Assembly: GCA_964304625.1 (NCBI GenBank)
Contig: OZ199838.1
Location: 1,086,809-1,150,808 of the forward strand
Length of the DNA: 64,000 nt
Origin: Kudoa neothunni
Taxonomy: Eukaryota; Animalia; Cnidaria
Direction: 5' to 3'
Part shown: positions 3,842 through 37,867 of the stretch, in pieces
Layout of the letters: each line of letters opens with the position of its first letter
Numbering within the stretch: position 1 is the first letter of the stretch
Translations under genes and position numbers: made by a program
The notes under the pieces: generated by a model
Databases searched by the model: none
Told to the model about the DNA's origin: nothing
What the model saw: only the letters and a program-made list of their open reading frames with translations

Positions 3842-6831
3842 ATGAAAATAGGTGGATTTCTCTATTTCGTTTTGGGTACCTTCCCGAGTGAATTTTAATA
3901 CTAATGTAAGTTTAGGTGTTTTCATATCAGGAACAACCAAAACTGATGGACGTTCAAGTTCTCAAGCTCCTGGTGCAGTTACACCTCCAACGAAAACACT
4001 GAAGTATCAGATTGAGAGGAAAACTGATGGCACGGACGAAATTAAACTCACTCTTGAAGGCTCTGATTATGCTGCCAACAAAAAGTGTCGTATAATGCGA
4101 TCTAACGAAGCAGAAATTGCAGCTGCTTCAAACACTGGAACACCAGCTGCGTTTGTAAACATCGTAAGCTGTCCCCCTAATGAAAGTGCTGCTGGAAATC
4201 AATGTGTCGTCCCTTGTAATACTGATACGAATAAAATAACTTATGATAAACTATCACCAAAAACAAGATACATATACGTTTACGCTGGCGATGACACGAA
4301 TTCTGTTAAAGAGAAAGTTAAAGGAGCGGGATCAAAAGTATTCGGATATTCAATACGTAAATCAACTTAATTATACATAAAAATAACAATAATTTAGCAT
4401 TATTGGCTAATCCACAAATTACCATGTCTACAGATGTTAATCAACTGAAATTCTTAGCAAAACCATGTGCTCCTGTAAATTGTCCTATTTATTACAAAGA
4501 TGTCAAATACGCCAATGGTGCCAAAGCGACAAGTTGTAATGCTGAGAATTTAGAAAACAAAGTTGAATTTGATTTATTTCTACCACATTACGAAGTAAGA
4601 TGCGAATATTATCCCAGTTTCTTTTACAATATGCCCAATCAATATATGAAGAACACCATAGATATTTATCAGCCTCAGTTTTATGCTGTTGCAAAAACTG
4701 GAGACAAAGTGGGAATTAAATTTACTAATTCACTATCATCTGAAATATGCCTATTCAGTCTTAAAAATGGTCAGGGTGCAACAAACAACGAACCATACAC
4801 GTCTGATTGTGGTGGTACCGGTAAAAAGTGTTATGCTCCTTGTAAGTATGTCGAACTCAATGGCCTAACGGGTAAAAAGATTTATAAAATTTTAATTCAA
4901 ACAAGGCATCACGACATAAAAGCCACTGAAGGTGATTCTAGAGGTCACGAACAAACTAAATTTGGTAATCCTTATATTAATATACATTCTTTACGATTCT
5001 TATTAGCAATTACTGAACCGACTGGTGGATTCCTCTCTTCTTATACCAAAGTTGGTGTTACGTTTGGAGGTACCGCATTTAAAGGAGCAAATGATCCACA
5101 AATTACTAAATGTGTTCTTAAACATAAACTGGCGGACACAATCACAGCAGGATCTGCAACTGAAACGAAATGCGCAGCTGGCAGTACCGTGGAAGGTTCC
5201 AATGATAATAAATGCAAAAATGATTGTACACAATTGGTGATTAATGAACTTACAGCAGGAAAGGCATACATGATTCAGATCACATTCGAAGAAATTACGG
5301 ATCCAACCGGTTTTACTGAAAATATATTCATAAGAACAGGTAAGTCATTTTATTTATTTTATAAAATAATGAATTATAAAGAACATGGAGATAGCGAAAC
5401 ATATGCAACTACTGATCCTACAAAGACAGACACAACAGTCTCTCTTGTAGTTATTGGTGGAACTCCACTTGTAGACAAGAGAACTGAACCTACCTGCGAG
5501 TATTTGATAAGCCCTGCTGGACTGGATAGCTTTTACCACGCGAAGTGCAATGGCTACACACCGTGTAGAGTAATTTGTAGGGATCAAGTCACGATAGAGG
5601 ATCTTGAGTCAAACACACCTTATGACATCAGAGTTATCGCACATAAGGGTTACGGCATAAAAGATTACAAAAATATACGAACAGGTTATTGAAGATATAA
5701 TTTACTCATTAAATTTTCAATAGCATTAACAACATTAACGATAACACACAAGGTAGCATTGGATGGTTTGTCATTGAAGGCACGATTAACTGCTGTGGAT
5801 CCAAATGCAATATGCAGTTATGTCATACAAAAGAAGAATGGTAACGATTATACAGACTATTACACATGTCCAGAGGTGCCAAAAGTAATGACACCTGTTA
5901 CCGCTCCAGTAGCACCAACACCCGCTCCAGCTGCTCCCTCTAGCTTAAGTTCTGCAAATCTAAACATGGCTAGAATTGCTGTACCAATAGTGACAGATAG
6001 TGATCTAATGCCAGCGGGGAAGTCTTCAGTTCCAGATAATTCAGATACACAACGTGCTGGTGTCGCTAAGAGCACAAACACATGCTTGTCAAATCCCCTT
6101 TGCAGTTCCATAACATTTCCCGAGTATGAAGCAGCAAATACATACAAAATTTTAGTCACAGCTATCGGAAAATCTTCACAACAAGAGCATATCATAGAAT
6201 CAAGTATTACAATTAATGCTTCAGTTAATGTCACTATTACGAATTTATTAAACGAAACTTACATTAGGTACACCAAAAGTAAACCCAACTGACTCCTCAA
6301 AATTGATATCAGTCGTCATTACACGTGATGGGAGTAGTTTCATTGTAACCACGACATATCCAGCCAGTATGAACGATAAATCAAAATGCAAATGGGAGTT
6401 ACGTAACAGCAGTGTCAAATCTAATGCGATAGTAAAATCTTGCATGGGTAGAGGCGTTGACGGATGTACTGCTTTTGAGACATGTAAAGAATTCAAAATA
6501 AATGGTTTAACTGATGGAAATAACTATTATTTGACTGTTTACAGTGCTCATGATAATAATATTTTTGGCGGTGCTGACATACAACAAGGTATATTATTTG
6601 TTCACAATGTAATTTAATGGTATATATCGTAGGAGCAAAGAGTAGTTCAGGGTGAACTTAGTAAAAAAATTTTTTTAATTTAATATTTTTTAGGGATAAA
6701 ACGAAACTTATGTAAACATTTTAAAATTCTGATATTTGAACTAACCGTTTTATAGAATCATTATTGTGTGCGTTGCCGTGGTTGTGGTCGGAGGGATAGT
6801 TGGAATCGTGATGTTGAAGAAAAGAGGTTAA
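3842..6831 (+). CDS. Cys-rich FN3-like repeat type-I membrane protein, paralogue 1 (most divergent; about 863 aa)
   Basis: Exons 3842-3875, 3916-4356, 4398-4964, 5007-5339, 5382-5684, 5724-6203, 6268-6588, 6633-6651, 6694-6711 and 6756-6831 total 2592 nt and are open in frame. Signal peptide MKIGGFLYFVLGVFISG; repeated L-x4-5-Y-x-[IL]-x-[VI] FN3-like motifs; TM IIIIVCVAVVVVGGIVGIVML then KKRG-stop. Confidence 0.85.
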
Positions 6832-7864
6832 ATTAATTTTCGTCAACTACAGTTAATAGGTAGTATTTACAATAGAAATTATTCGATCACATAGCATTAT
6901 TTGAATTTTTAAGTCATTAGCCGAATTTATTGTTTTTCGAATTTCGCTTTCGGCCTTAGAGGGAAAATAAGATTTCCGATGTTTCTTTTTTTAGAACTAT
7001 ATGATTTCACAAGATGTTTCTCCATTTTATATTGATTAGAATTTGTTTTTTTTTATTCTAACTGTAGTTACAGTTTCTGTTAGTTTGAAATCTGATCAAA
7101 TTATGTTAACGAATTTCCAGGTCAAAATATTAATAATTTGAGCTTGATATTATTCGACATAATTATTATAAAAAACTTAAATAAGAAAATTTGTTTATTT
7201 ACAAATAATACAAATATATAGTCAAAATAAAATAAATGAATCTTCAAATTATCGCGATGCATTAATTTACTGGCTTTTGAACTTTTAGCGAGATTTTTAT
7301 AATATTAAATGAAATCTTATAGAATTCTTTAGTGAAAAATTTTATTTTTATTTAGCAATTATGAATCTTTAAAAATTCATTTATACTCAAAAAAAGATAA
7401 ATGAGTGTTCACATTTTCAAACTTGTAACTGATAATTGACTAATTAAAAATTTTTAATTTTTTTTATAAGAATCCGTTTTATTTAAAATGTTTAAAATAT
7501 ATTTGGGTGTAATTTTACACATAATATGAAAATATTTATTGTTTATATAATGATAAGCTGGACATTATTTCGTTAAATGTAAGAATGAGATTAATATCAT
7601 GTACGTTGTACCGAAACAAAAATAAACTACGAAAAGAAACATGAACGTTTTAAATTACACTTTAATTATATTGTCGTAACGAATGACCGGGGACGAGGAT
7701 CGCACACGTTATCTTTGGTCACATCCCTTAAATAACCAACCATTACGATCGTACTCTACTAATAAATGATTAAAAATTATGTTATATAAGCTAACTTACA
7801 AAATAATGGAATAATAAATATTTATCGTTTATATTTATTGATATTTAAATTATAACACCTGTTA

Positions 7865-8298
7865 TATATAGGTTGTGAAGTTCGACTGGTTAGGCCTTCT
7901 CCATTGACGCTTTAGGCACTGCAGCGTCATATTAAGGCGACTTACGTTTATGCAATAATGTGGAATTTTAACCCATTAAACATCCTCATTTCGGAGCAAC
8001 CACAACCCCAACCATACCCTGGACTAACCCAGAATTAGTCTGGAAAGTCGTCTGAATGCAGGCGTCAGCTCTACGGAAACCCCCTACTGGGTTGTATTTC
8101 GTTCATGTACCCTGGCGTTTATGAACACCGAGTTCTACCCTACCACCAGGCTCCACACCCAGTTGCAAGCAAGACCATGATAAATTGTAGATCGTTGCGA
8201 TTACTACAATACAGCCTTCCTATTTAATTTCGGATTAGGCAACGAACTCACAACCTCAAGGTATGCGATCTCGACCTAACACCATTATGCCATATTGT
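7865..8298 (-). mobile_element. Probable tRNA-headed SINE (GC-richer structured island)
   Basis: The minus strand has an A-box-like TGGCATAATGG (8292-8282) and a B-box-like GAGTTCGTTGCC (8249-8238). Several internal hairpins follow, then a 3' GTAAGTCGCC... stem-loop reminiscent of L2-type SINE tails. Confidence 0.5.
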
Positions 8299-8321
8299 CG
8301 AAGTTTATAATAACTGTTATA

Positions 8322-9060
8322 CCGTCGAGATTGGATACTGCGTGACTGGATATTGCGTAATTCCAAAATTTCGACGTTATTCTTTTTTGAGAGAAACCTT
8401 TTTTTGGTATTGTTATTATTTTATCATTTTGTAAACATAGTTAACATTAAAAAATAAATTTAATTATTTATACATTAAGTCTCGTTATTGCGTGGTGTTT
8501 GTGGCCGATTTATGTAAATCTAAGAGTGTTTTCATTATGCCCCCTAAAAAAGTAATAGTTACGAGAAAAGAGAAATCATTGATTATTATAATTCGATATA
8601 AATATTGAAAGTTGTCGAAAAAATCACAATTTCTAAATTTAAATTGAATGATATGATTATCTATGTTGAATACTAATACATTGCCATGTTTAAGATTATT
8701 TAAAAATTGATAGAATTCGTTCACACGAGTATAAATTCAAAACTACGGATATTGAAACTAAAAGGAGGACATATTTGGGGAAAATTGAAAATATAGATGG
8801 TGAACTGTATGATTGTCTCGTTAAACAATGGTCAGATGATAATGTTCTGCTGAGATATGTTATTGTCGAAATTGCTCTATATATTGCAAATAACAAAGAA
8901 ATTTCCGATTTAAAGTCTAGTTAAGGGTGGTTTTCAGAGTCCAAGTCAAAATATGGGATAGCTTTCGAAATGTTACACGGTGAGGTTGCGAATACAGACA
9001 TTTGATCTATTGACTCATGGACTATTGAAAACACTCATTTGGCTGAAGCATGTTAGGAAT
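8322..9060 (+). mobile_element. Degenerate pogo/Tigger left end with CENP-B-type HTH remnant
   Basis: TA|CCGTCGAGATTGGATACTGCG...CTGGATATTGCGTAATT resembles the TIR at 32342. Positions 8760-9000 translate as ...NIDGELYDCLVKQWS...KSS*GWFSESKSKYGIAFEMLHGE. Confidence 0.65.
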
Positions 9061-9090
9061 CCCATGCATTTATTTTATCACTATAAATTT

Positions 9091-12000
9091 GGGCAATAGG
9101 GTAGGACATGGCACCTAAAAAACCCCTTCTGTGAATCGTTTTTTCGCCGATTCTTTCATGAATGTTCATAATAAAGTAAAAGAATACAGAGAGGAAGTAT
9201 TCAGCTAATTATGGTAACACCGAATTTTGGTGCAAAATCCCCAATACAACACCGTCGGCTCACGTGACATCTTCGTTAAGTTTCCAATAACCAGTGAAAA
9301 CCCACCTTATTGTGCACGCATTAACTTCTACATTTATTATACGCCTTCATAACATTTTTTGAATGGGTCGTTTGAAAATTATACGACTCAGACGTTTAGT
9401 CAAACCTTACACATATTATTATAAATTGTCTGCTCTATCATTTTGGGTATACCGATTATGAACCTTTTAAAAGAAAATTACAATTAATTATCATTTGTTG
9501 TAGTTTTTATATTTTTTTGGTTAATTTATTTGAATTATAAAAAAGATTATAAACATTTTATCATTAAATTTTTATAGTGACAATACAATAAATCTCCAAT
9601 TTACATTGCATTCGATATCTGTCCAAAGAAATCTTATAACAATTAATGTTTAATGGATCATTATTAACGAAAGTTAATTGTACAAAATAAAAGAAGCAAC
9701 GTAAATAGGAATTTAGTAATGTAATATTAGACATATACAACACTCTTCATTTCATTTTTTAGATATATGTATGGTCTTTTAATTTGATATTCAATCTTTT
9801 ATCATATTTATAAAACTAATGATCATATTTTAAGCCTTAGATGCTATAATGTACTTATTTTGAGGAAAGTTTATAAGTAAAGATGTTTTTTTTTATATTT
9901 CTCAGGTGCTTCACCATTTTGCCAGTTGATTTATCATTGTATTATATAAAATTTAACATTAATTCTTTGGTTTAGGCTGTGTTCCGAAAATCTCCCTTTA
10001 AATACCAGTCTCGATTATTTTTGCGCTTCCCGCGAAGAAGCGTCTCATAAATCTCAACAACATACCCTCTGCCACCAGATGGTTTTTGTAGATGAAAATA
10101 GTTTTATCCATGCTCCAATAATAAATAATTTTATATATTTTATTCACCGTTATGTTGGGGGAGGGATGAAACAAAGTCAAACCTAAAAAGAACGTTCTAC
10201 TTCGAGGAGATACCTTAGTTTTACGTCTTCGAATTGCGAGACTCTAATATTTAGGTACAAAATAATTACTTTTTAAAATAATAAATGAATGAATAATCCA
10301 CATCATTCCTTTTATGCGATTTAATTTTAGATATTGGCCTTTGAACGTTCATATTCGTTTTGGTGAGGCAAAAACAATTGAATATGTAACAATTGCTACA
10401 CCTAAAATGAAGAGGAAACAGACACTATTTCTCTACGAGCATATTAAACAATTTAATGAGATTATTTGTAGTAAAGTGACAATAACGACCACTACCGTAA
10501 GTAATAATGAGGTTACTATTGGTGGGTGACGTGATATCGTTACATTATTTAACAACTATCGCAAAAGCCCCCCTTCGCGAAGGCTTCCTTGCCCAGCCAA
10601 GTATGCTAACACCTGGCGCTGACTATAGCCTTTTTGATTTTTATGTAAATAGCGCTAATGCCCAGTTTTTCCTGGTACAATGTGATGGAAAATTTAACTT
10701 TAATTTAATTTTCCTATTTTTATTTATTCATTTTAAAGCTTGTCACTATTTTTGCAATGTGCTGATTTAGATAAACTAAATTATGCCCGCACTTTCTATT
10801 CAAACATAAATAGACGTATTGGGGGAAATTAATGAGTATTTCTAAATTTATTTTACAAATTATTGACTAAAATTATGATGATCTTAATTTTAAGAGAAAT
10901 GTAATTAGCGATTAGAGTTCAGTTATTTATGAAACAAAATTATTAAGTAACTTAAATAGGACTTCCAGTTCTTTTTAAAATTTTGCGATGCAAATTAATC
11001 CTTCTAGTTATAAAATTTATTATTAGTCTACAAATGATAAAAAAAATAAAATCAACCTAAGATGCCTCCGAAATATAAATATTAATTGTTACTCCTTTTT
11101 TCGCAATTTTATAATGATGCCAATAATATTTTGAACTGCTGTGAGCAGTAACTTACGTATTCACTATTGTAACAAAATTCTCTCATTTATAAATAAATCC
11201 AACCTTGCTTTTTATCAAGAATACTTATTGGTTCAAAAATATATACATTTAATTATCAAAATCCGATTAAATAAAAAATGTAAAGGTGTTTTTAGTTTGA
11301 AAAATTACAGTAATGCTTAAACATCAACTGGTTTTCTTGAAGGATGCACCCTTTACAAATTAACGTATTGTTTGATTGCACTCAAAAAAATTTCTTTATA
11401 TTGAACTATTCATAGATTAACAAAAACTTTTTGAAAATATCTCTTAGATCGAATAGACCATTAATTTCTAAGTAACTTACATGGCACGCATTGAGAAGGG
11501 ACTGTATTTTTATGCAGCTTTTATATCATAATGAATTAATGCGAGCCCCAAGAAAACAGTATATTGATTTGAATATTAACCTCAAGGTCTGGGGTAAGGA
11601 ATAATTAGGATACATAGAGAGACTCAAATTATTCCAACGTGGTAACAACTTGTTATCTCAAATTATGTGTTTTATTTAAAATGATCATAATCTATTTTTC
11701 TTAACTATATCCGTAACGCTCGAAAAGAAAAAATACATACCAAATAACTTGTTTATGCTTCAAGTTTTAAGGGAAATGCGACAACTCTTGTAAATGTGAC
11801 GTTAATAGTTTTATTTGTCTCAAATTAGCTCCGAACAGGCATATGTAAAATTTTTAGAGCATTCTATACCATAATTAAGAGACTCTTTTCCTATGTAGTG
11901 AGTAAAAGTTCATTTTATTTGGCTATCAATTAGAAGTAAACAAATATCAATATTATGCAAGTGTATTTAATCTGCTATTTGTGAAGACAACCAGAAAATT

Positions 12001-14283: not shown

Positions 14284-14285
14284 TA

Positions 14286-16112
14286 TAGGGCTTCTCAATT
14301 GAACTCGGCACCATTTTGGTTCCAACAGTAATTCATATTTAAACATTAATGATATTTTTAGTAAATGTTTATTAGTGGTTCTCGTAAAAAATAAACAAAT
14401 ACCAACGGAAAACACATAAAATATTACATGTTAAAAACAAGTTTAATTCGATTTCCCCAATAAATTTTTGTGTAACCTTTAATAGGTACCCTATAATAAT
14501 TCCTCTTTAAAATTTATTTTTAAGAAAATTATATCATGGAAAGAACCAATATAATATCAACTTTAGACTCAGGAACAAAAGACCTCGTATAAAAAATACG
14601 ATTAAAGGATCGAGGCAGCGCATTAAAAATATGGTAAACTGAATATGTTTCTTTCGTATCTCAGATAATGGTCTTATCATCAGAATTCTCTTATTCTATC
14701 AACTATGTGTGACGTTTTCTGAGCGAACTCATTGGTTACCATAATTGTGTTGTCGCAAAGAAATTTCATAGTGCATTGAATCCAGAAGAGAGAAATAACA
14801 ATTTTATTGAGTCGGATGGTTCTATTTCCGTTGATAATGAAGTTCTAATTACTTCGGAGCCTAAAAAATGAGTTCAACGGAAAACAATATCATCCGAACT
14901 GAGAGAGCAAATGTTCAACTTTTTTGAAAAGGGGAGGAGTGATACCTATATTGCATCGGAGATGCGTCTGCCTCGGTCTACAGTATGATCTATTTTATCC
15001 AAATTCAGGATGAGTAGAACTCTTGAACTGAAACCTAGAGGCGGAAATAGACGACCTGTTCTTTCTCCTGAACAGAAAGAAAAAATTATTAGCTGGGTAG
15101 ACGAAAATTCCTTGATCTCCCTAAAAGAAATATAAAATAAAGTCCATGAGGATTTTGGAATTGTTGTGTCGCTTAGTACAATTGACAGGGTGATTAGACA
15201 ATTTCATTATACTCTAAAAAATTAAGTGAGAGTGTCAGAAAGAAGAAACTGCGAAACCACTATTCATAAAAGAAAGAAAAACGCAGAAATGTTCAGGGAA
15301 CTGGAAACGACGGTGACTCATGAGAGTATAGTTTTCCTTGATGAAGTAGGGTTCTCCGTTGTGACGCGACCTAAAGGAGGTAGATCTTTAAAAGGAACGT
15401 CAGCCTATTGCTTCGTTTCGGCCGCTAGAAGCAGGAATATTTCTGTTGTAGCAACTGTAAATAAAAATGGAATAATTTACAGCAAAATACACGACAAGGC
15501 GGTTACAGGGGAAGACTTTAAGATTTGTTTAGAAGAGCTTAAGAATTCCTGTATAGCGAAAGATGTACATCAACCTATTTTCGTAATGGATAATGCCAGA
15601 ATCCATCATTATACGGGATTAAAAGATTTGGTTGTTAGAGAAGATATCCTAATAAGGTATTTACCACCTTATGGTCCTTTTCTTAATCCCATAGAAAATG
15701 TCTTCTCTGTTTGGAAGAACCTGGTCATCCGTAGGCAATCCAAAAATGAAAATGAATTAAGAGTGGCCATTAAAGATTGCTTTAAAGAAATTACTCCACA
15801 ACAATGCGATGGATTCTACCGCAAAATGTTGGGATACATTACCAGGTCATCCCATGGAGAAATTATCTTAGAATAAAAAATATATAAATATCGGATTTAA
15901 AGTTTTGTTGTTTCTTGTTTCTATTTATGTAAGAAATTTAGTAACACTATTTAACACCAAACTTAATATGGATATACGCTCTAATCTTATAATAATATTT
16001 AAAAATATGTTTAAAAGAAAAATAATTATTTAAATTGCAAAACATTAATTTTACAGCAAAACGATTCGAGTATGTAGAGTAGTGTCATCATAATTATAAG
16101 TTACGAGATATG

Positions 16113-16143
<31 letters not shown>

Positions 16144-17166: not shown

Positions 17167-20091
17167 ATGAAGTTATTGGTACATTTATTTGAAATATGCT
17201 TGATTTTTTCCTGTAATTAACAATTAAATTCTTTTTATTAATAAAATATAGCTAAATTTGTTTCACTTGATGCGGAGACAGGTGGAGTACAAACTCCGGC
17301 TGTACCGCAAGCTCCAGTTCTAGCACAAGTTCCTACTAAGGCACTCAATTACTCTATCGTAAAAGATAACAGTGGTGGAAGAGAAGTACAATTAAAATTA
17401 ACTGGTAGTGATTTCGCTGGATCCAAAAAATGTTATATCAAGAAATCTGCTGAAAACCTTGGAAGTTATACAGACATAGATACTTGTCTTCAAGGCAATG
17501 ATCAATGTGGAAATAATAATTGTTGTAGAACATGTACGGGAAATGGAAATAAATTTACCTTCGATAAATTTTCACCAAGAACTAAGTATGTAGTTGTATT
17601 TGCTGGGGATAATGCTTCAGCTCCTGTCTCGAAAACTAATGATGGGGCAGTTTTTGGACTTGAAATAGGTAAATTAATGATATATTCTTTTTTTTAAACT
17701 TGATATTAGCACTATTGATTAATCCAAAAGTTACAATAACTGTTACAGAGGATAAGAAACTTAAATTGAGCACATCTACATGTGAACCGGTTGAATGCCC
17801 CATATATTATAAAGATGTGAAATATGTAGGAGGAACTGCAGGGGATACCTGTATTGCTGCAAAAAATAGTGAAGATGAAGTCGAATTTGATTTGATGATA
17901 CCTCATTATGAAATGAGGTGTAAGGATTATCCAAGTTTTTTTTATAAATTGCAAAACGCTTATACATTGATGAGTATGGATGTTTATAAACCACAATATT
18001 ATGTCAAATATAATGATGCTAGTAAAAATAAATATTTGTTAAAGTTTACAAACAAATTTCCATTCGAAATATGCCGATTCAGCATTAAAGATAAAGATAC
18101 TCAAATTATTGCTGGTAAGAGCGATGAATATACTTCCAATTGTGGCGGAACAAATAAAGATTGTTACGCTCCTTGTAATGACGTCGAACTAAAGTTTACT
18201 GCTTCAAAAACCGTAGTTGATGTATTGATCCAATCCAGACATTTTCCTTTAAATAAATATAACAATAAGTATTATGGATACGAACAGAAAAAGTTTGGTA
18301 ATTTGAGTACTTATGAATTCAACTAATTCCGTTTAGTTGTAACTGAACCTTCCCCTCCTGGGAATGATTTATTATCAGATATCAAAAATAATGGTGTCAC
18401 TCTGAATGTTCCTCTATTTAACCATCAGTAAACCCTAAATTTTCAACGTGTACAGTGAAATATTATCCGGCAGACAAACCACCACCAAGTGACGGAGCAG
18501 GAACTAAGTGTGGAAATTCTGATACCGACTGTTAAAACTGACTGTCTGGCTACTTTAAAAATAACCGAACTTTTGAGTGGTAAACCATATATACTTACAA
18601 TTGCAGCTGCTACAACACATGACGTGCCAGAAAACTTTAAAGAGCATATATTCTTTCGAACAGGTAAGAGATATAAAGAATAAATAGATTTTATTGATAA
18701 TTATATAGAAAAAGGAGAATCAAATACATTTCCTACAGTAACCCCAACGATGGGAGAGAGAACTGCTTCGATCAAGGCCTTAGATGGACAAGAAACTTTA
18801 TCAAGTTCTGACATTACATGTTCTTATTATGTTAGTCCCAGAGGAAAGGATGTGTACGTCTGTGCAATGTGCGTCGATAGTTATCCATGTCGAGGTTATT
18901 GCAGAGAGACTCAAACAATTGTTGGATTTAAAATCAGGAACAGAATATGATCTTAAAGTTGTTGCTCACAAAGAATATGGCACCAAAATACATCAGATCA
19001 CAACAGGTATAAAATTAGCTACAAAAATAAATAATGAATTTTTAGTGAAATCAAGACTCACACTTGAGAAACAATTTGTTGATAAAGGTTTCAAAATAAT
19101 AGGCACATTATCTACTCCGGATGATACAGCTGAGTGTCATTACAATGTGGAAAATTAAAAATGGAGACAAATATAAATTGGTTTATCAATGCCCAAGAGC
19201 ACCCATTTCTACAGAACCAGCTAAAAAATCCTCCAGTAAATCGAAATACGATAAAATCACTGTAGCTAGATCGTCTGCTGATCTATCTACCTCGACAACA
19301 AAAAAAACTATTTCACCATCATTAGCTACATGCACCGAGATTGCTTTGTGCTCCGAAAATATTATTCACGAATAATTATGATCGATTAAAAAAATATCGT
19401 GTAGTGGTAACATCAGTTAATGGAAAAGTACAAACAAATATTGTAATTCCTGAAAGTAGAATATTTTTTAATTTGATAATTTTATTATGAAAATAAATAA
19501 TGTAAATGATTAAAATTAGATCCACTACCAACAAACCAGGATATAAACAAACAAATTATAGTAAGTATTAAGCGCGATGGAAACAAATTGAAGATCACAA
19601 CAGTACTACCACAGGAAGTATCTGAAAGCACTTGTGGTTGGGAATTAAGAGATTCAACTAAACCTGATAAAGTTTTAATTAAATCATGCAATGGGGAAAA
19701 CGATGGAGGTTGTGAAAGTTTTCCAAAATGTAACGAATTTGAAATCACTGATGTTGAAGACACAAACGATTATCATCTGACGGTTTACGTAAATAATGAC
19801 AAATCAATCAAAGGAAATAGTGAAATTAAGCAAGGTAAATGTGAGTCGTTCTTTCGATTAATAATTTTATTTTAGGAGAAACGTTTGATACAATGAAATC
19901 AACGTAATTTGACATGTATATATAATTAATTAATTTATAATTATATTATAGGTCCAAAAATACCATGTAAAAATATATATTGTTGTTATATATTAAAATA
20001 ATTATTATATAGAATAATTGTAGTTGCAGCGGTTGTAGGTGTAATTGTCCTTACAGCAATTATCTTCGTTATTATAAAGAAGAAGAATTAA
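17167..20091 (+). pseudogene. Cys-rich FN3-like membrane protein paralogue 2 (four single-base frameshifts; pseudogene or assembly error)
   Basis: Same 10-exon layout: signal MKLLVHLFEICLIFS, TM IIIVVAAVVGVIVLTAIIFVII, KKKN-stop. Relative to copies 3/4 it has -1 at ~18422, +T at 18927-29, +A at 19151-54 and +A at 19356-59. Confidence 0.75.
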
Positions 20092-24850: not shown

Positions 24851-27777
24851 ATGAAGTTATTGGTACATTTATTTGAAATATGCTTGATTTTTTCCTGTAA
24901 TTAACAATTAAATTCTTTTTATTAATAAAATATAGCTAAATTCGTTTCACTTAATGGAGAGACTGTTAGGGTACAAACTCCGGCTGCACCACAAGTTCCA
25001 GTTCCAACAGAAGTTCCTACAATGGCACTCAGTTATTCTATCGTAAAAGATAACAGTGGTGGAAGAGAAGTACAATTAAAATTAACTGGTAGTGATTTTG
25101 GTGAATCCACAAAATGTTATATCAAGAAATCTGCTGAAAACCTTGGAAGTTATAGAGACATCGATACCTGTTCTCAACCTAATGAACAATGCGCAAATAA
25201 TAATTGTTGTAGAACATGTACGGGAAATGGCAATAAATTCACCTTCGATAAATTTTCACCAAGGACAAAATACGTAGTGGTATTTTCTGGAGACACTACT
25301 TCAACTCTTGTCTCGAAAACCAATGATGGAACAGTTTTTGGACTTGAATTACGTAACTAATGATACTTTAAGTTTGTTTAACTTGATATTAGCACTATTG
25401 GTTAATCCACAAGTTACAATAACTGTTACAGACGGTAAAAAACTCAAATTAAGCACTATCACATGTAAACAAGTTGCATGCCCCATATATTACAAAGATG
25501 TGAAATATGTAGAAGGAACTGCAGGGGATAGTTGTACTACTGCACATGCTAGTGATAATGAGGTGGAATTTGATTTGATGATCCCACATTATGAAATGAG
25601 GTGTAAGGATTATCCAAGTTTCTTTTATAAATTGCAAAACGCTTATACATTGATGAGTATGGATGTTTATAAACCACAATATTATGTCAAATATAATGAT
25701 GCTAGTAAAAATAAATATTTGTTAAAGTTTACAAACAAATTTCCATTCGAAATATGCCGATTCAGTATTAAAGATCACTCAACCACCGTCGATGCTACCA
25801 CGTCCAACGAATATACATCAAATTGTGGTGGAACAAATAAAATTTGTTACGCTCCTTGTAATGACGTCGAACTAGCTTTTACTGCTTCAAAAACCGTAGT
25901 CGATATATTGATCCAATCTAGACATTTTCCTTCAGAAAAACAAACCAATGTTTATCTCGGATACAAGCAGAAAAAGTTTGGTAATTTTAATATTTTTAAT
26001 CTTAAATAATCTCCCTTAGTTGTTATTGAACCCTCCGCTGCTGAGAGAGCATTATTCTCAAAAATCACAAAAAGTGGTGTCACATTGAATGTTCCACTAT
26101 TTAATCCATCAGAAGACCCTAAATTTTCAACTTGTACAGTGAAATATTACGCAGCAGATAAACCACCACCAAATGATGGAACGGCAGCTAATTGCGAAGA
26201 TCCTAGTGCCGTTTGTCAAAAGGACTGTCAGGCTGCTTTAACAATATCAGGACTTTTAAGTGGTAAACCATATACACTCACAATTACACCAGCGACTACA
26301 AATGGCATACCAACCGACTTTAAAGAGCATATATTCTTTCGAACTGGTAAGAGATATAAAGAATAAATAGATTTTATTGATAATTATATAGAAAAAGGAG
26401 AATCAAATACATTTCCTACAGTGACCCCAACGATGGGAGAGAGAACTGCTTCGATCAAGGCCATAGATGTAGATGAAGGCGGAGTTTTATCAAGTTCGGA
26501 CATTACATGTGCTTATTATGTTAGTCCCAGAGGAAAGGATGTGTACGTCTGTGCAATGTGCGTCGATAGCTATCCTTGTCGAGGTTATTGCAAAGAGACT
26601 CAAACAATTGTTGGATTAAAATCAGGAACAGAATATGATCTTAAAGTTGTTGCTCATAAAGAATATGGTACCAAAATACATCAGATCACAACAGGTATAA
26701 AATTAGCTACAAAAATAAATAATGAATTTTTAGTGAAATCAAGACTCACACTTGAGAAACAATTTGTTGAGAAAGGTTTCAAAATAATAGGAACATTATC
26801 TACTCCAGACGATACAGCTGAATGCCATTACAATGTGGAAATTAAAAATGGAGACAAATATAAATTGGTTTATCAATGCCCACGAGCACCCATTTCTACA
26901 GAACCAGCTAAAAAATCCTCCAGTAAATCGAAATACGATAAAATCACTGTAGCTAGATCGTCTGCTGATCTATCTACCTCGACAACAAAAAAAACTATTT
27001 CACCATCATTAGCTACATGCACCGAGATTGCTTTATGCTCCGAAATATTATTCACGAATAATTATGATCGATTAAAAAAATATCGTGTAGTGGTAACATC
27101 AGTTAATGGAAAAGTACAAACAAATATTGTAATTCCTGAAAGTAGAATATTTTTTAATTTGATAATTTTATTATGAAAATAAATAATGTAAATGATTAAA
27201 ATTAGATCCACTACCAACAAACCAGGATATAAACAAACAAATTATAGTAAGTATTAAGCGCGATGGAAACAAATTAAAGATCACAACAATACTACCAAAG
27301 GAAGTAGCTGAAAGCACTTGTGGTTGGGAATTAAGAGATTCAACTAAACCTGATAAAGTTTTAATTAAATCATGCAATGGGGAAAACGATGGAGGTTGTG
27401 AAAGTTTTCCAAAATGTAACGAATTTGAAATCACTGATGTTGAAGACACAAACGATTATCATCTGACGGTTTACGTAAATAATGACAAATCAATCAAAGG
27501 AAATAGTGAAATTAAGCAGGGTAAATGTGAGTCGTCTTTCGATTAATAATTTTATTTTAGGAGAAACGTTTGATACAATGAAATCAACGTAATTTGACAT
27601 GTATATATAATTAATTTATTTATAATTAAATTTTAGATCCAAAAACACCATGTAAAACTATATATTGTTGCTATATAATAAATTAATTAATAATATAGAA
27701 TAATAGTAGTAGCTGCAGTTGCAGGTGTAGTTGTCCTTGTAGCGGTTATATTCGTTGTCATAAAGAAGAAGAATTAG
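24851..27777 (+). CDS. Cys-rich FN3-like repeat type-I membrane protein, paralogue 3 (apparently intact)
   Basis: ATG at 24851 starts a signal peptide. GT-AG introns of mostly 39-42 nt fall at the same phase-1 positions as in copy 1. There is a 28-nt and a 15-nt (27637-27651) micro-exon, and a TM exon ending KKKN-TAG. Confidence 0.88.
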
Positions 27778-31199: not shown

Positions 31200-32298
31200 A
31201 TTGAAAAATTCCCATTTATTGCTGAACTTCGATCGCATCCATTCTTCGTGAAGATATGAATTAAGGTACGCTATGGGGACACCACTCATCCGTCGTAATA
31301 ATTTGGTCATAAAATGGTATCACACAACTTCCACTGTATTTGTGTGGTGACTTTCTATTGTGACGAATACCTTGGAATAGTTACCACTTATGTGGGTAAA
31401 TCCATACATTCCAATGGTTGGATATGCTTTCCATTCTTCAGTAAAGATTGTGGAACCAGACTCAACTTCTTGACGTCTTAATGGTATCAATGTACTTGCA
31501 TCCCTTCTTTGAGCAATAAAATATCTAGACTCTAATAGACTTCTTTTGCCTTCACAATCGACGGAGTATTCGCATATTCCCGCCACCCAAGGCCCTTCGA
31601 TACGAATACCATAACGCTCAACAGTGTAGGAATTTTCCCTCCTTTCAGTTAAGTCATTCTTCGATTCAGATGGATTATAGGTTTCAATAGGGGCGTTTCT
31701 CCACCAATCATATGCCAAATATCGTCCACGATTATTTTTTCGCTTTCCTTTTAGGAGACATTCATCAGTTTCGACAACTTTTTTAGGGCCACCAAATTTT
31801 GAACGCAAATAAAACGATTCAGTTGAAATTATCCAAAATTTGGAAAGCCAATATGTAACCGTTTTTCCAGATAATTGCGCCAAACTAACTGTTTTGCATC
31901 GCTGTTCTTCGAAACTCCATAAATATACAATCTCAAATATTTCCTGAATTGTTAAATTTGAACAATTATTGCCAAGTACGTTAGTTATTGAAAAGAACGT
32001 TGATGTCTGAGGAGAACAATTAGTTTTGTAGTTTCTATCGTAGAAAATAAAATATGTTTTACTAACAACATTACTTGGAACATATATATGAAAATTTTTC
32101 AGCTAAGTTATTTTTTCATTCATGCAAAGCATTATTATTTAATTTTCTTTTAATAACTTTCAGTTTAAAATTATGTCTTCCACAATTTCTGCACCTTGTA
32201 GAAATTCGGATAAGGTTTTTGTCAATTTACAAATTTGTTAGTTTCTCGTTTCTGAGTAAAAAGCTGTAAAATTGGTGTTGGCTACAGATTAACACCAT
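31200..32298 (-). pseudogene. Merlin/ISXO2 (DDE_Tnp_IS1595-like) transposase, disrupted
   Basis: Motifs GGPKKVVETDECLLKGKRKNNRGR, WVAGICE, RRDASTLIPL, GSTIFTEEWKAY and HTNTVE, plus downstream YLNSYLHEEWMR and upstream RCRNCG. Stops and frameshifts are present. Confidence 0.88.
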
Positions 32299-32341
32299 AA
32301 GGTAAATTCAGTAAATGTCTTGTTAATTAAAATGAAAACTA

Positions 32342-34225
32342 CAGTCGAATCTGGATATTGCGTAATTTATTTCCATCCTCAAAAAATTACGCAATATCCA
32401 GAAATTACTCAATATAGGTATTGGCGCAAGCGCATTGTGTAAGAACAAAAATTTATTTTGGTTTAAAATAACTAGTAATTTCAGTCTGTTTATGCTTTTT
32501 TTGGATTATTTCAGGTATGAAATTCATAACTGGATGCGTTGAAAATAATGCTTTTGGGTTTTCTTGCATAAAAGCTTTTCTGATTAAATTGATCGCTTTT
32601 TTAAGTTCCGAAGTTGACACAAGCGTTTCATCTTTTACAAAATCCGGATTGACATTCTCTTAAAATTTATCAGTTTCGTGCGTTTCAGGTAAATCTATCT
32701 TTTTCTCCTCTTCAATGTTGTTGATTTCGTCAAATTTTTTATCTAAAAAATAAGGTTGATGTACAATGTAAAAGTGTGAAAAAATTTTCACCATCTAATA
32801 ATTTTTAATTCAGGGTTATAAAGGATGGAATTACAATGCTCAAAAAGTCTAGATTTTCTGAAACAATTTTGAATAGTAATCGAAGATACGTTTTCCCATG
32901 TCTACTTCAAAGTTTTTATACAGTCCAAAACGGTATACTTAATTAAATTTGAACTGTTGTCTTCAGATAATTGATAGGTTGTCAAAATTTTACAATACTG
33001 GCATTTTAAACCGCGTATGACACCAAGGTCCATTGGTTGTAGTACACTTGTGGTGTTTTTAGGTAAAAATACTAGTTTAACATTTTCAAAGTGATGGAGG
33101 TTTTGTGGATGCACAGGGCACTGATCCAATAATATTAGAACTTTCCTTTTTCTTCTCGTATTTTTTATCATAGGATTTAAGGATATCGTAAAAAATTTCA
33201 GAAGACATCCAAACATTTTTTATGCATAATTTTTCAAAGGAAATGACTCTGATTTATTAAAACACCTGGGTTTTTGATACTTCCCTATTACAATATGTGG
33301 GAATTTTTTCCCTGTTAAAGACGCAGACACAAGAACAGTAACCTTTTTCTTGGATTGTTTCATTCCTTTTACGTCGGATTCGTCATTTAGAGTATACGTG
33401 TGTAAGAGTAACTGTTCATAAAAACGAGGCGTTTCATCCATGTTTATTATGTAGCATTTTTTGTATCCTAGTGAAATTCCTGGAAATTTAACCAAAAAAT
33501 CCAGTACAGTTTGATTATTCACACTGCTGGCTTCACCATGCAATTTTTATAATGAATACAGTATCTATTTTTAAATCCCACGAACCAACCATTACTACCG
33601 GAAAATTCATCAGGCCCTATAGATTTAGCGATACTTTTGGCCTTTTCAACAATTAAGTATGCAGGGACAATCTTCTTCTGATTTCGTATTTTAGTGATCC
33701 ACGTATAGAGTAAATTGTCCAACTCCTTGTATTTGCCTTCTTTCATTCTTTTTCTTGAAGTTGAAACAGTAGAATTAACAATATAATTTTGATCAGCTAT
33801 AATCCTATCATGTGTAAAGTGCCCTGCAAATATACTTTAATGGGGTTAGATAATTTTATATTACTAGATAGCGTGAAATGTTTAACAGTCATTGCTTTTG
33901 CTCCTTTAAGAGATTTAATTGAATTATAGTATTCGATAATTTCAATTTTTTCAGCCACCATTCGCTGGTTCCTTGTCATTTTTGTTTCGCAGAATTCGAA
34001 AAGAAGATTAAGGGGGATTAAACTAAACAAAATGGTAAGCAGTAGAGATATTTTAGTTTTAGCTCAAAATCTTAAATTTTTACATCGTTAATAACAACTT
34101 TTTATCTTAGCTTGCTTTGTTAACATCTATTTAAATACTATATACGCAATGTTTAATTAAAAGATCTAAAATATACGTTATATTTCAATAAACTTGTGAA
34201 ATTACGCAATATCCAGGTTCAACTG
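32342..34225 (-). mobile_element. pogo/Tigger element (DD31D) with a frameshifted transposase
   Basis: TIRs CAGTCGAATCTGGATATTGCGTAATTT and AAATTACGCAATATCCAGGTTCAACTG, with TA on the left and CA on the right. ORF pieces 33797-34030, 33519-33746 (CENP-B HTH, FSGSNGWF), 33220-33543 (HGEA, NMDET) and 32902-33216 (LLDQCPVH, FLPKNTTSVLQPMDLG). Confidence 0.93.
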
Positions 34226-34967
34226 CATTCTGAAAATGTAAGAATTTGTTATTAATGTTTGGATACGAATAAAGAATACATTAATTATTAGGAGTTCATA
34301 AAATAAATTATAAATATACTAGAATTAATTTTAGGTAAAAACCAAAACTTAAGCGAGATATCTTTTCAAAGTTTCTTCTTAGTGAGCTTCAAAAAAATTG
34401 ACGGAATCAAAGTGATGCAGTTAAAGCGAAAATGTTTTCCATTATAATCGACAGAAAGATTAACACTTTATTGAAATAATGTCGATAAAAACACATTATA
34501 AATTTAAAACGACGCAAAACCATGCTTAATCATGTCTAATAAGTTAAATTCATATTGAAAATAGAACAAAACTACCTTGCGAATTCACACGCACATGTAC
34601 CGATTGAAGCCGAACGTAAATTTTAGCAAAATTCTTAAAAGTGAATAATGGGGTTAATTGTTGTTCCACAAAAAGTATAAAAAATGAATAATTGATTTAA
34701 AATAAAATCCGGATTGTCGGATATGTGAAAAGGGGTGAAAAATGGGAGCTGCACACTCCCCATTACTGATTATATAAAGGTAAGTAATTCTATATTTTCA
34801 AACAAATTATCTAAAATTATTTTTAAAAACAGAACGGCGATTTTTTCTCATTCGATTACAATTTTTTGGCGAATTTTGATCCTATTCTAACTATCCATTA
34901 ATCTCATATTGAAATAGTCCAATAAATGCAACGAGAATTATCGTATAAAAAATATATACAGGGTTAA

Positions 34968-37867
34968 ATGAAATTATTAGCATACTTTTTTGGAATATGT
35001 TTAGTTATTTCATGTAAATTAACAATTATGTTGTATTTTCTAATAAAATATAGCTAAATCCGTGTCATTAACTGTGGGGAATGATCAGGTTCCAGCTGCG
35101 GCTCCAGCGGAAGCTCCTACAAAGACACTCAGCTATAAAATTCTAAAAGAAGATACTGGAACAACGGTTCAGTTAAAACTGACTGGTAGTGATTTTGATG
35201 GATCCAAAAAATGTTATATCAAGAAGTCTGCTGAAAACCTTGGAAGTTATGCAGACATAGATACTTGTTCTAGAACTGGCAATGAATGCGACAGTAGTAA
35301 ATGTTGTATAACATGTAATGAAGGGGGAAATAAATTGGCATTCGATAAATTTTCACCAAGAACAAAGTATGTAGTTGTATTTGATGGGGATAGTGCGTCA
35401 ACTCTCGTCTCGAAAACTAATGATGGAACAGTTTTTGGGCTTGAATTGGGTAAGCTAATGATATTTTTTTGTTTTATTAACTTGATATTAGCATTACTGG
35501 TCAATCCAAAAGTTACAATAACTGTTACAACTGAAAAGAAACTTAAATTAAGCACTATTACATGCAAACCAGTTACATGCCCTATATATTTCAAAAATGT
35601 ATTATACGCAACCGGAAATGCAGGGGGTAGCTGTATTGCTGCACATGCTGATAATAATGAAGTGGAATTCGATTTGATGATACCTCATTATGAAATGAGA
35701 TGTGAAGGATATCCAAGTTTTTATTATAAATTGCAAAACGTATATACTTTGATGAGTATGGATGTTTATAAACCACAATATTATGTCAAATATAATGATG
35801 CTAGTAAAAGTAAATATTTGATAAAGTTCACCAACAAATTTCCCTTCGAAATATGTCGATTCAGCATTAAAGATAAAGATACTCAAATTATTGCAGGTAA
35901 GAGCGATGAATATACTTCCAATTGTGGTGGAACAAATAAAGATTGTTACGCTCCTTGTAATGACGTCGAACTAGCTTTTACTGCTTCAAAAACCGTAGTT
36001 GATGTATTGATCCAATCCAGACATTTTCCTTTAAATAAATATAACAATAAGTATTATGGATACGAACAGAAAAAGTTTGGTAATTTTAATATTTTTAATC
36101 TTAAATAATCTCCCTTAGTTGTTATTGAACCCTCCGCTGCTGAGAGTGCATTATTCTCAAACATCAAAAATAATGGTGTCACTTTGAATGTTCTTCTACT
36201 TAATCCATCCGACGGCCCCAAATTTTCAACTTGTACAGTGAAATATTATGAAGCAGATAAACCACCAAAAGAAGGAACACAGGCTAAATGTGGAAGTTCG
36301 CCCACCAACTGTCCTACTGACTGCAACGCTGCTAAAGCAATAACTGAACTTTCAAGTGGTAAACCATATATACTCACAATTACACCAGCAACATCGAGTG
36401 GCCTTCCAACCGACTTTAAAGAGCATATATTCTTTCGAACTGGTAAGAGATATAAAGAATAAATAGATTTTATCTAAAGTTATATAGAAAAAAATGACAC
36501 AAAGACATTTCCAGAAGTAACACCAACGTTAGGTGAGAGAACTGCTTCAATTAAGGCTATAGATGAAGGCGGAGTTTTATCAAATGAGGACATTACATGT
36601 GCTTATTATGTTAGTCCCAGAGGAAAGGATGTGTACGTCTGTGCAATGTGCGTCGATAGCTATCCTTGTCGAGGTTATTGCAAAGAGACTCAAACAATTG
36701 TTGGATTAAAATCAGGAACAGAATATGATCTTAAAGTTGTTGCTCATAAAGAATATGGTACCAAAATACATCAGATCACAACAGGTATAAAATTAGCTAC
36801 AAAAATAAATAATGAATTTTTAGTGAAATCAAGACTCACACTTGAGAAACAATTTGTTGAGAAAGGTTTCAAAATAATAGGAACATTATCTACTCCAGAC
36901 GATACAGCTGAATGCCATTACAATGTGGAAATTAAAAATGGAGACAAATATAAATTGGTTTATCAATGCCCACGAGCACCCATTTCTACAGAACCAGCTA
37001 AAAAATCCGCAAGTAAGTCGAAATATGATAAAATCACTGTAGCTAGATCGTCTGCTGATCTATCTACCTCGACAACAAAAAAAACTATTTCACTATCATT
37101 AGCTACATGCACCGAGATTCCTTTATGCTCCGAAATATTATTCACGAATAATTATGATCGATTAAAAAAATATCGTGTAGTGGTAACATCAGTTAATGGA
37201 AAAGTACAAACAAATATTGTAATTCCTGAAAGTATAATTTTTTTTAACTTGATAATTTTATTATGAAAATAAATAATGTAAATGATTAAAATTAGATCCA
37301 CTACCAACAAACCAGGATATAAACAAACAAATTATAGTGAGTATTAAGCGTGATGGAAACAAATTGAAGATCACAACAGTACTACCACAGGAAGTAGCTG
37401 AAAGCACTTGTGGTTGGGAATTAAGAGATTCAACTAAACCTGATAAAGTTTTAATTAAATCATGCAATGGGGAAAACGATGGAGGTTGTGAAAGTTTTCC
37501 AAAATGTAACGAATTTGAAATCACTGATGTTGAAGACACAAACGATTATCATCTGACGGTTTACGTAAATAATGACAAATCAATCAAAGGAAATAGTGAA
37601 ATTAAGCAAGGTAAATGTGAGTCGTCTTTCGATTAATAATTTTATTTTAGGAGAAACGTTTGATACAATGAAATCAACGTAATTTGACATGTATATATAA
37701 TTAATTAATTTATAATTATATTATAGGTCCAAAAACACCATGTAAAACTATATATTGTTGCTATATAATAAATTAATTAATAATATAGAATAATCGTAGT
37801 AGCTGCAGTTGCAGGTGTAGTTGTCCTTGTAGCGGTTATATTCGTTGTCATAAAGAAGAAGAATTAG
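34968..37867 (+). CDS. Cys-rich FN3-like repeat type-I membrane protein, paralogue 4 (apparently intact)
   Basis: ATG at 34968 (MKLLAYFFGICLVIS), first intron 35014-35053, the same exon layout and micro-exons as the other copies, and a TM exon ending KKKN-TAG. Confidence 0.88.

What the first reader, a model, noticed from the sequence alone, without database searches (positions are those of the whole stretch)
3842..37867. Tandem array of four paralogous, unrecognised Cys-stapled FN3-like surface proteins
Seen: four same-strand genes share one 10-exon plan encoding a signal peptide, a Pro/Ala-rich leader, six repeats, a short stalk, one TM helix and a 4-aa tail. Known: FN3 domains end in an L-x-P-x-T-x-Y tyrosine-corner motif, and parasite FN3 surface antigens exist (e.g. 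taeniid EG95/45W). Inference: this is a lineage-specific cell-surface adhesin, antigen or recognition family with no signalling tail, expanded locally between two housekeeping genes (NOP2, HTT). I do not recognise the family, and it is the best candidate for an undescribed system in this window.
Basis: partly seen in the sequence, partly recalled or inferred. Interest (0 to 1): 0.85.

Follow-up and report, generated by a model that had tools for sequence, protein, structure and literature searches.

The report
Huge Kudoa FN3-like surface-protein gene family
The four genes are real members of an apparently undescribed family of at least about 210 membrane-anchored, FN3-like surface proteins in the tuna muscle parasite Kudoa neothunni, a plausible host-facing or recognition repertoire whose expression is still unproven.

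Summary
The observation largely holds. Four same-strand genes (window 3842-6831, 17167-20091, 24851-27777, 34968-37867) share one 10-exon, all-GT-AG plan. It encodes a signal peptide, a Pro/Ala leader, a Cys-bearing beta-sandwich ectodomain, a two-microexon stalk, one TM helix and a 4-residue basic tail.

Corrections:
- There are seven 4-Cys modules, not six, because exon 3 encodes two.
- Gene 2 is frameshifted as assembled.
- Gene 1 belongs to a different subfamily from genes 2-4.
- The family is not a local expansion.

The genome matches the published Kudoa neothunni assembly (Myxozoa). Two independent strict motifs find 209 and 214 copies, against 0 and 1 controls, on all three chromosomes.

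AlphaFold models give an FN3 fold for modules 5 and 3 and an Ig-like sandwich for module 2. Pfam names nothing above threshold. dN/dS is 0.07-0.74, so the genes are under purifying selection. Genes 2-4 are mosaics of gene-conversion tracts, and modules 1 and 4 vary most.

Outside this genome I found only unnamed ORF fragments, from three public samples. I found no paper describing the family and no RNA evidence.

The scan had already flagged this family elsewhere in this genome (45 notes).

Best reading: a diversifying surface repertoire without a signalling tail.

The parts
3842..6831 (+). Gene 1, intact, 862 aa, subfamily A. Exons: 3842-3887, 3931-4356, 4398-4964, 5007-5339, 5382-5684, 5724-6203, 6268-6588, 6633-6651, 6694-6711, 6756-6831.
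   Evidence: The model has one terminal stop and all introns are GT-AG. The closest paralogs are on chromosome 3, at 77-78% identity in exon 5. Public DNA contigs cover it, introns included.
17167..20091 (+). Gene 2, same 10-exon layout but frame broken in exons 4, 5 and 6 as assembled. Exons: 17167-17212, 17252-17668, 17710-18297, 18337-18663, 18709-19006, 19046-19455, 19520-19834, 19876-19903, 19952-19966, 20013-20091.
   Evidence: Alignment to gene 3 shows five one-base length differences in homopolymer runs. The model has 11 internal stops. The 3' half is 92-100% identical to genes 3 and 4.
24851..27777 (+). Gene 3, intact, 841 aa, subfamily B. Exons: 24851-24896, 24936-25352, 25393-25980, 26020-26346, 26392-26694, 26734-27141, 27206-27520, 27561-27588, 27637-27651, 27699-27777.
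34968..37867 (+). Gene 4, intact, 831 aa, subfamily B. Exons: 34968-35013, 35054-35449, 35492-36079, 36119-36442, 36488-36784, 36824-37231, 37296-37610, 37651-37678, 37727-37741, 37789-37867.
4398..4964 (+). Exon 3 of gene 1, encoding module 2 (Ig-like sandwich, Cys at 23/28/46/68) and module 3 (FN3, Cys at 117/137/144/148).
   Evidence: AlphaFold2 on a 22-paralog alignment gave mean pLDDT 73.9. VIA-align: residues 1-79 match Ig-like domains at Z 7-7.9, and residues 82-188 match FN3 domains at Z 6.2-7.2. Foldseek matches tandem-FN3 cytokine receptors at E 9e-5.
5382..5684 (+). Exon 5 of gene 1, encoding module 5, an FN3 fold with four invariant Cys (38, 55, 61, 65) and a tyrosine corner (L74, Y80, V84).
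   Evidence: AlphaFold2 gave pLDDT 84.5. VIA-align Z reached 8.6 and nearly all of the top 50 are FN3 domains. Foldseek's top hits are all FN3, though weak at E 2.7e-3. ESM Atlas TM scores of 0.60-0.69 point to fn3 clusters.
37789..37867 (+). Exon 10 of gene 4: TM helix (mean Kyte-Doolittle 3.5 over 21 residues) plus the tail KKKN and the stop.
   Evidence: Across about 50 sampled paralogs the tails are 2-5 basic-rich residues, such as KKKN, KKKRD, KRKN, KKRN and RKRN.

Best explanation
The window carries four members (three intact, one frameshifted as assembled) of a very large, Kudoa-lineage gene family encoding type I membrane proteins.

Shown:
- A signal-peptide exon.
- A short Pro/Ala leader.
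- A chain of seven beta-sandwich modules, each with four conserved cysteines. Modules 3 and 5 are modelled as FN3 and module 2 as Ig-like. Module 4 is linked to module 5 by profile similarity.
- A 14-residue stalk, one TM helix and a 2-5-residue polybasic tail.
- At least about 210 copies in tandem arrays on all three chromosomes.
- Purifying selection on every module.
- Mosaic gene conversion between neighbouring copies.
- Modules 1 and 4 evolve fastest, and the membrane-proximal half is homogenised.

Inferred:
- The proteins are inserted into the ER and delivered to the parasite plasma membrane.
- There they stand as disulfide-braced rods that cannot signal on their own.
- They act as a diversified binding or coat repertoire at the interface with the fish host, or with other cells.
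- New variants arise by duplication and segmental conversion.
For: - Gene models and shared phases.
- Signal peptide and TM hydrophobicity.
- Four invariant or near-invariant Cys per module across 19-22 paralogs.
- Folds.
- Module 4 matches module 5 by hhalign at 81% probability, E 1.2e-5.
- Copy number: the exon-5 query gave 411 candidates, with all 150 scored at E<3e-16. The exon-7 query gave 321 candidates. A strict exon-5 motif gave 209 hits against 0 controls. An independent exon-3 motif gave 214 hits against 1 control.
- All 20 sampled loci on three chromosomes are colinear for exons 2-7.
- dN/dS is 0.07-0.74 in every exon across 10 paralog pairs with finite dS.
- Between genes 3 and 4, dS falls from 0.57 in exon 2 to 0.03-0.07 in exons 6-7. 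Blocks where different pairs among genes 2, 3 and 4 are near-identical alternate along the genes.
- N-x-S/T sequons number 67 observed against 175 +/- 12 expected in the ectodomain exons, but are not depleted in neighbouring non-family ORFs. This fits passage through the ER.
- The same module order appears in divergent contigs from other samples.
Against: - There is no RNA or protein evidence. The runs that hold the locus are DNA, since their contigs span introns, and the one RNA run laid gave 0 reads. The published annotation also had almost no parasite RNA (PMC12239612).
- Surface location, disulfide pairing and any binding partner are inferred only.
- No whole exon has dN/dS above 1, so diversifying selection is not shown.
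- K. neothunni develops inside muscle fibres, where antibody pressure may be low.
- Modules 1, 6 and 7 were not modelled. They get no significant Pfam or PDB sequence hit, only weak Atlas leads.
- A C-terminal hydrophobic stretch could in principle be a GPI signal rather than a TM helix.
Confidence: 0.55

Rival explanations
1. These are parasite-parasite adhesion or self-recognition molecules rather than host-facing ones. On this reading the family mediates contacts between the nested cells of myxozoan plasmodia and developing spores, or allorecognition between co-infecting clones, as polymorphic IgSF families do in other cnidarians.
For: Tandem FN3/Ig ectodomains are the classic metazoan cell-adhesion architecture. 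The fold hits are to NCAM, DSCAM, contactin, titin and fibronectin. All modules are under purifying selection. Subfamilies appear shared with other samples rather than species-specific (weak support).
Against: More than 200 copies with conversion mosaics is far more than developmental adhesion needs. There is no cytoplasmic tail to link to the cytoskeleton or to signalling.
Confidence: 0.2
2. These are structural or internal secretory-pathway proteins. Examples would be spore-valve or polar-capsule wall components, or ER/Golgi residents retained by a C-terminal dilysine (KKXX) signal.
For: Most tails place Lys at -3 and -4 (KKKN, KKRN, KKKRD, KKRG). Disulfide-braced modules would suit a resistant spore structure.
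Against: Whole subfamilies have KRKN, RKRN, KK or RKK tails that break the dilysine rule. What is conserved is therefore a generic polybasic stop-transfer. Structural proteins rarely need hundreds of diverging copies with variable distal modules.
Confidence: 0.1
3. The family is largely silent, decaying repeat DNA, made of dispersed duplicates carried along with transposons, and is not a working gene family.
For: Transposase relics lie between the copies. Gene 2 is frameshifted. Some sampled loci are partial or carry a stop (L067, L075, L080, L081). The published genome is 45.6% repeats. There is no RNA evidence.
Against: dN/dS is well below 1 at dS up to about 2. All 28 Cys are invariant or nearly so across the sampled paralogs. 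Intact frames with conserved splice sites are seen in most sampled copies. The layout is retained in divergent samples.
Confidence: 0.07

Closest known systems
Metazoan multi-FN3 type I adhesion receptors (NCAM, DSCAM, contactin, DCC type) and FN3 domains generally (Pfam PF00041)
   Same: Both have the seven-strand sandwich fold, the tyrosine-corner motif near the C-terminal end of the module, tandem arrangement and type I topology. A profile of module 5 reaches generic multi-FN3 proteins through its C-terminal third.
   Different: Every module here carries four conserved Cys. No module reaches Pfam's fn3 threshold (best 23.8 bits against a cut-off of 25). There are no Ig N-terminal domains of the I-set type and no cytoplasmic domain. 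The family has more than 200 copies.
Taeniid oncosphere antigens EG95/45W
   Same: Both are parasite proteins with a signal peptide, an FN3 ectodomain and a C-terminal hydrophobic anchor, and both form small multigene families.
   Different: EG95/45W have one or two FN3 domains in cestodes. Here there are seven modules in a cnidarian. No sequence relationship was seen in any search.
Giardia variant-specific surface proteins, and the VSP-like genes reported in the myxozoan Sphaerospora molnari (bioRxiv 10.64898/2026.02.11.705288)
   Same: Both are large families of Cys-bearing type I proteins with one TM helix and a very short conserved tail, proposed as variable surface coats.
   Different: VSPs have more than 10% Cys with many CXXC motifs and are not FN3. 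Here Cys is 3.6%, with only 6 CXXC in 16,539 residues and FN3/Ig folds. The preprint text I searched does not mention fibronectin.
Class I cytokine-receptor homology module
   Same: Both are tandem FN3 pairs with four conserved Cys in a module. These receptors are the top Foldseek hits for exon 3.
   Different: No WSXWS motif occurs in any of the 127 exon peptides. There is no cytoplasmic Box motif, and the match is at fold level only (TM about 0.3, rmsd 12-14 A).
Hydractinia Alr allorecognition IgSF family (PNAS 2022, cited in PMC11792419; not tested here)
   Same: Both are cnidarian, clustered, polymorphic type I proteins with tandem Ig-like ectodomains.
   Different: Alr proteins have signalling tails and number about 40 genes in one complex. 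No homology was tested.

Membership tests
FN3 domain (Pfam PF00041 / FN3 fold) | Seven-stranded Greek-key beta sandwich of about 90-100 residues | tested here: met
   Module 5: VIA-align Z 8.6 with 91 of 100 residues aligned, and nearly all of the top 50 are FN3. Module 3: Z 6.2-7.2 to integrin beta4, gp130 and collagen XX FN3 domains. Modules 1, 4, 6 and 7 were not modelled.
FN3 domain (Pfam PF00041 / FN3 fold) | Sequence score above Pfam's gathering threshold | tested here: not met
   The best scores are 23.8 bits (cut-off 25) on the gene 1 ORF and 16.4 bits on gene 4. There were no fn3 hits for the module 1, 6 or 7 alignments.
FN3 domain (Pfam PF00041 / FN3 fold) | Tyrosine-corner motif (L-x-P-x-T-x-Y-type) before strand F/G | tested here: met
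   Conserved L74, Y80 and V84 in module 5. SPRTKY in module 1 and Y86/L88 in module 7. The profile matches generic FN3 proteins through positions 64-95.
Giardia-type VSP | More than 10% Cys with frequent CXXC motifs | tested here: not met
   Cys is 3.6%, with 6 CXXC in 16,539 residues.
Giardia-type VSP | Single TM helix followed by a short conserved tail | tested here: met
   A TM helix plus 2-5 basic-rich residues in the sampled paralogs. The tail sequence is not CRGKA.
Class I cytokine receptor | WSXWS motif in the membrane-proximal FN3 domain | tested here: not met
   0 matches in 127 exon peptides.
Taeniid EG95/45W antigens | Sequence homology to EG95/45W, with one or two FN3 domains | not tested
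   No EG95/45W sequence was on hand. The module count (seven) and the host phylum differ.
Dilysine (KKXX) ER-retrieval membrane proteins | Lys at -3, and at -4 or -5, from the C-terminus in all members | tested here: not met
   The rule is met in the KKKN, KKRN, KKKRD and KKRG tails. It is broken in the KRKN, RKRN, KK and RKK subfamilies.

The most novel reading that the evidence does not exclude
The family is a true antigenic or ligand-variation system in an animal parasite. On this reading only one or a few of the more than 200 copies are expressed at a time on the plasmodium or sporoplasm surface. Silent copies and pseudogenes such as gene 2 would serve as donors for segmental gene conversion into expressed copies. 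That would parallel protozoan var/VSG/VSP systems, but built from FN3 modules in a cnidarian.
Probability: 0.12. Interest if true: 0.9.

Novelty: new variant of a known kind. Interest (0 to 1): 0.62.

Why it matters
Myxozoan genomes are described as drastically reduced; the K. neothunni annotation has 5,316 proteins (PMC12239612). A family of at least about 210 multi-module surface genes would equal roughly 4% of that count. I infer, without having checked the annotation, that it could have been missed or masked, because that annotation relied on protein hints and called 45.6% of the genome repeats.

How myxozoans persist in immunocompetent fish is an open question. This family gives concrete candidates for surface antigens, diagnostics or vaccine targets in Kudoa, which spoils tuna flesh. 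It also gives a testable case of gene-conversion-driven diversification in an animal parasite.

Tried and rejected
- RNA test: the single look-up of sequencing runs and read-laying runs found only DNA holders. X1-X3 contigs span introns 3, 4 and 6 without gaps, and the RNA run X10 gave 0 reads. This is no verdict on expression.
- Pfam on all exon ORFs and on paralog alignments of modules 1, 6 and 7 gave nothing above threshold.
- PDB sequence profiles gave only borderline titin FN3 hits for module 4 (E 0.0064) and module 7 (E 0.035), and nothing meaningful for modules 1 and 6.
- hhalign between modules linked only 4 with 5 convincingly. The 3-7 and 6-7 links were weak at 30-35%, so the modules are ancient repeats.
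- I tried to fold modules 2-5 together using the natural read-through ORF of gene 1 with exon fragments as rows. MAFFT misplaced the exon-4 rows, so alignment A2 was abandoned and exon 3 was folded alone.
- The long hits of the representative search with lengths like ours (P0106, P0129, P0088) turned out to be Cys-free bacterial FN3 repeat proteins.
I shortened it and reran it.
- The search for homologous proteins was not used. Its length window excludes full-length relatives of an exon-sized query, and the exhaustive profile search had already been run.
- The spliced full-length protein was never sent to any search or fold tool. Exons were joined only inside scripts, to count length and stops and to print the termini.
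- Disulfide pairing could not be checked because model coordinates are not returned.
- The stwintron readings noted elsewhere in this genome are not needed here. Exons 8 and 9 are explained by ordinary GT-AG microexons whose lengths differ by multiples of three between gene 1 and genes 2-4.
Full report
**What is there.** I rebuilt all four genes from the sequence. Each has ten exons on the + strand. Every intron is GT-AG and 39-64 nt long, and the phases are identical; exons 2-7 are all symmetric phase 1. Genes 1, 3 and 4 give uninterrupted products of 862, 841 and 831 residues.

Gene 2 has the same layout. Relative to gene 3, however, it carries five one-base length differences in homopolymer runs, near 18422, 18538, 18927, 19151 and 19356. 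These break the frame in exons 4-6. It is either a recent pseudogene or a local assembly error.

Exon 1 encodes a 15-residue hydrophobic signal peptide. Exon 2 begins with a Pro/Ala-rich leader. Two microexons encode a polar stalk. Exon 10 encodes a strongly hydrophobic 21-residue helix followed by KKRG or KKKN.

Between the diverged gene 1 and genes 2-4, exon lengths differ only by multiples of three. That is comparative support for the splicing model in the absence of RNA. I joined exons only inside scripts, to check frame and stops.

**Organism.** The window's assembly has 40,260,978 bases in four contigs: 17.15, 12.04 and 11.05 Mb plus 18.2 kb. This matches the published Kudoa neothunni assembly from yellowfin tuna. 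That assembly is 40.2 Mb with an N50 of 12.0 Mb, three chromosomes and a circular mitochondrial genome, and a median intron of 49 bp (PMC12239612). Earlier scan notes had suggested this species.

**Modules and fold.** Alignments of each exon across 19-22 paralogs from all three chromosomes show four invariant or near-invariant cysteines per module.
- Exon 3 holds eight cysteines and two modules, so the ectodomain has seven modules and 28 conserved Cys, not six repeats.
- Six modules share the spacing C-(17-28)-C-(6-14)-C-(3-5)-C, followed by a tyrosine-corner-like motif.
- Module 2 has a different Cys pattern.
- Module 6 carries a 45-70-residue Pro/Ser/Thr-rich loop between its second and third Cys.

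An AlphaFold2 model of module 5 (pLDDT 84.5) matches FN3 domains almost exclusively. VIA-align Z reaches 8.6 over 83-91 of 100 residues. Foldseek's list is all FN3, though weak at E 2.7e-3. ESM Atlas gives TM 0.60-0.69 to fn3 clusters.

The exon-3 model (pLDDT 73.9) has two sandwiches. Residues 1-79 resemble Ig-like domains (Z 7-7.9). Residues 82-188 resemble FN3 domains (Z 6.2-7.2). Tandem-FN3 cytokine receptors top the Foldseek list at E about 1e-4. These Z values are in the range the tool itself calls middling; the argument rests on how uniform the hit lists are.

Module 4 is tied to module 5 by hhalign (81%, E 1.2e-5). Modules 1, 6 and 7 were not modelled and have only weak leads. No module reaches a Pfam threshold, which would explain why automatic annotation does not name these genes.

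**Family size.** This is not a local four-gene expansion.
- Exon 5 of gene 1 finds 411 candidate places in the genome, and all 150 scored have E<3e-16. Genes 2-4 are too distant from gene 1 even to appear among those 150.
- Exon 7 finds 321 candidates.
- A strict DNA pattern for the module-5 motif gives 209 matches against 0 for the reversed control: 46, 52 and 111 on the three chromosomes.
- An independent module-2 motif gives 214 against 1, and includes all four window genes.
- Twenty loci sampled across the identity range are all colinear for exons 2-7.
- Most have the same TM-plus-polybasic end. A few are partial, carry a stop, or lack a detectable TM.
- Copies sit in many tandem arrays, for example chromosome 1 at 16.44-16.56 Mb and chromosome 2 at 9.79-9.87 Mb.

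**Evolution.**
- Across ten paralog pairs with finite dS, per-exon dN/dS is 0.07-0.74 at dS up to about 2. All modules are therefore under purifying selection, which argues strongly that these are working genes.
- Modules 1 and 4 are consistently the most divergent, at 50-63% identity within subfamilies where the others are 71-90%.
- Between genes 3 and 4, dS falls from 0.57 in exon 2 to 0.03-0.07 in exons 6-7.
- A 60-nt sliding comparison of genes 2, 3 and 4 shows alternating blocks in which a different pair is near-identical. This is the signature of repeated segmental gene conversion. It explains the 'polarised variability' noted on this window without needing positive selection.
- Gene 1's nearest relatives are on chromosome 3, so two subfamilies lie side by side here.

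**Relatives elsewhere.** An exhaustive profile search of 1.84 billion representatives found two classes of hit. One is generic multi-FN3 proteins, matched only through the tyrosine-corner third of the profile. The other is 16 short Cys-patterned ORF fragments.

Those contigs keep the module 4-5-6-7 order and short introns. The one contig compared (L031, from the ENA sample) is at most 69% identical in DNA to this genome, so it comes from another, unidentified species. A domain tree places some of the fragments inside K. neothunni subfamilies, but with limited support.

**Expression.** This remains untested. The runs holding the locus are DNA, and the RNA run gave no reads.

**Interpretation.** The topology is shown. 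Surface delivery is inferred. One sequence-intrinsic hint supports passage through the ER. N-x-S/T sequons are 2.6-fold depleted in the ectodomain exons (67 against 175 +/- 12 in shuffles), but not in neighbouring non-family ORFs. The paralogs are related, so this is not a clean statistic.

With no cytoplasmic domain the proteins cannot signal alone. The copy number, arrays, conversion mosaics and variable modules 1 and 4 fit a diversified binding or coat repertoire best. Parasite-parasite adhesion, a structural or ER role, and silent repeat DNA are the rivals.

**Novelty.** Full-text searches found no description of such a family in Kudoa or other myxozoans. The Sphaerospora molnari papers report different, VSP-, RIFIN- and ETRAMP-like families.

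The scan itself has met this family repeatedly in this genome (45 notes). One follow-up (s1-690105) reached a similar 'variable module, antigenic variation not shown' reading on other DNA.

I class the family as a new variant of a known kind. The fold and architecture are known, and expanded parasite surface families are a known evolutionary pattern. The module type, the scale and the host phylum are new.

Noticed in passing
window exons 2-7 of genes 1, 3, 4 and loci L065-L084: N-glycosylation sequons (N-x-S/T) are strongly depleted in the ectodomain exons: 67 observed against 175 +/- 12 in residue shuffles, with 0 of 500 shuffles as low. Genes 3 and 4 have 0 and 1 sequon in about 775 residues. 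Non-family ORFs of the same window show no depletion (19 against 13.7).
   Followed up: partly
window 18337-19455 (gene 2, exons 4-6): Gene 2 shows five one-base length differences from gene 3, all in homopolymer runs. Elsewhere the conserved protein reading survives in shifted frames, and the 3' half is 92-100% identical to genes 3 and 4. It is a very recent pseudogene still taking part in conversion, or a run of assembly errors.
   Followed up: partly
window 15226-15876 (+), 31320-31883 (-), 32902-33746 (-): Transposase relics lie between the paralogs. One is a DDE_3 (Tc1/mariner-type) ORF at E 5e-29. One is an ISXO2/IS1595-like fragment. One is a pogo/Tc5-like element with DDE_1 and HTH_Tnp_Tc5 pieces split by stops.
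   Followed up: partly
window 5724-6203, 26734-27141, 36824-37231 (exon 6): Module 6 carries a 45-70-residue Pro/Ser/Thr-rich, probably disordered loop between its second and third Cys. The loop's length and sequence vary between subfamilies, yet it holds a nearly invariant Ala-Arg pair (A82, R83 in alignment A6). That pair could be a processing or recognition site.
   Followed up: no
window 36080-36118 against 25981-26019 (intron 3), with flanking exons: Several introns (3, 5, 7, 9) are 100% identical between genes 3 and 4, while adjacent exon segments differ by 10-30%. Conversion tract boundaries therefore fall inside exons.
   Followed up: partly
window 37679-37788 and the equivalent in genes 2 and 3: In genes 2-4 the 15-nt microexon 9 begins with GT immediately after the intron-8 acceptor (AG|GT). 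The site could therefore also act as a donor. Gene 1 has GG there. Other notes on this genome propose nested introns at TM exons, but ordinary microexons suffice here.
   Followed up: partly
Its identity was not verified. The upstream gene is an RsmB/NOP2-type methyltransferase (E 1e-15 to 1e-16).
   Followed up: partly
loci L065, L076, L077, L079, L083, L084 (other chromosomal copies): Some otherwise complete family members showed no TM-plus-basic-tail exon within 450 nt of exon 7 with my simple pattern. They may be secreted variants, as another scan note suggests, or simply misses of the pattern.
   Followed up: no
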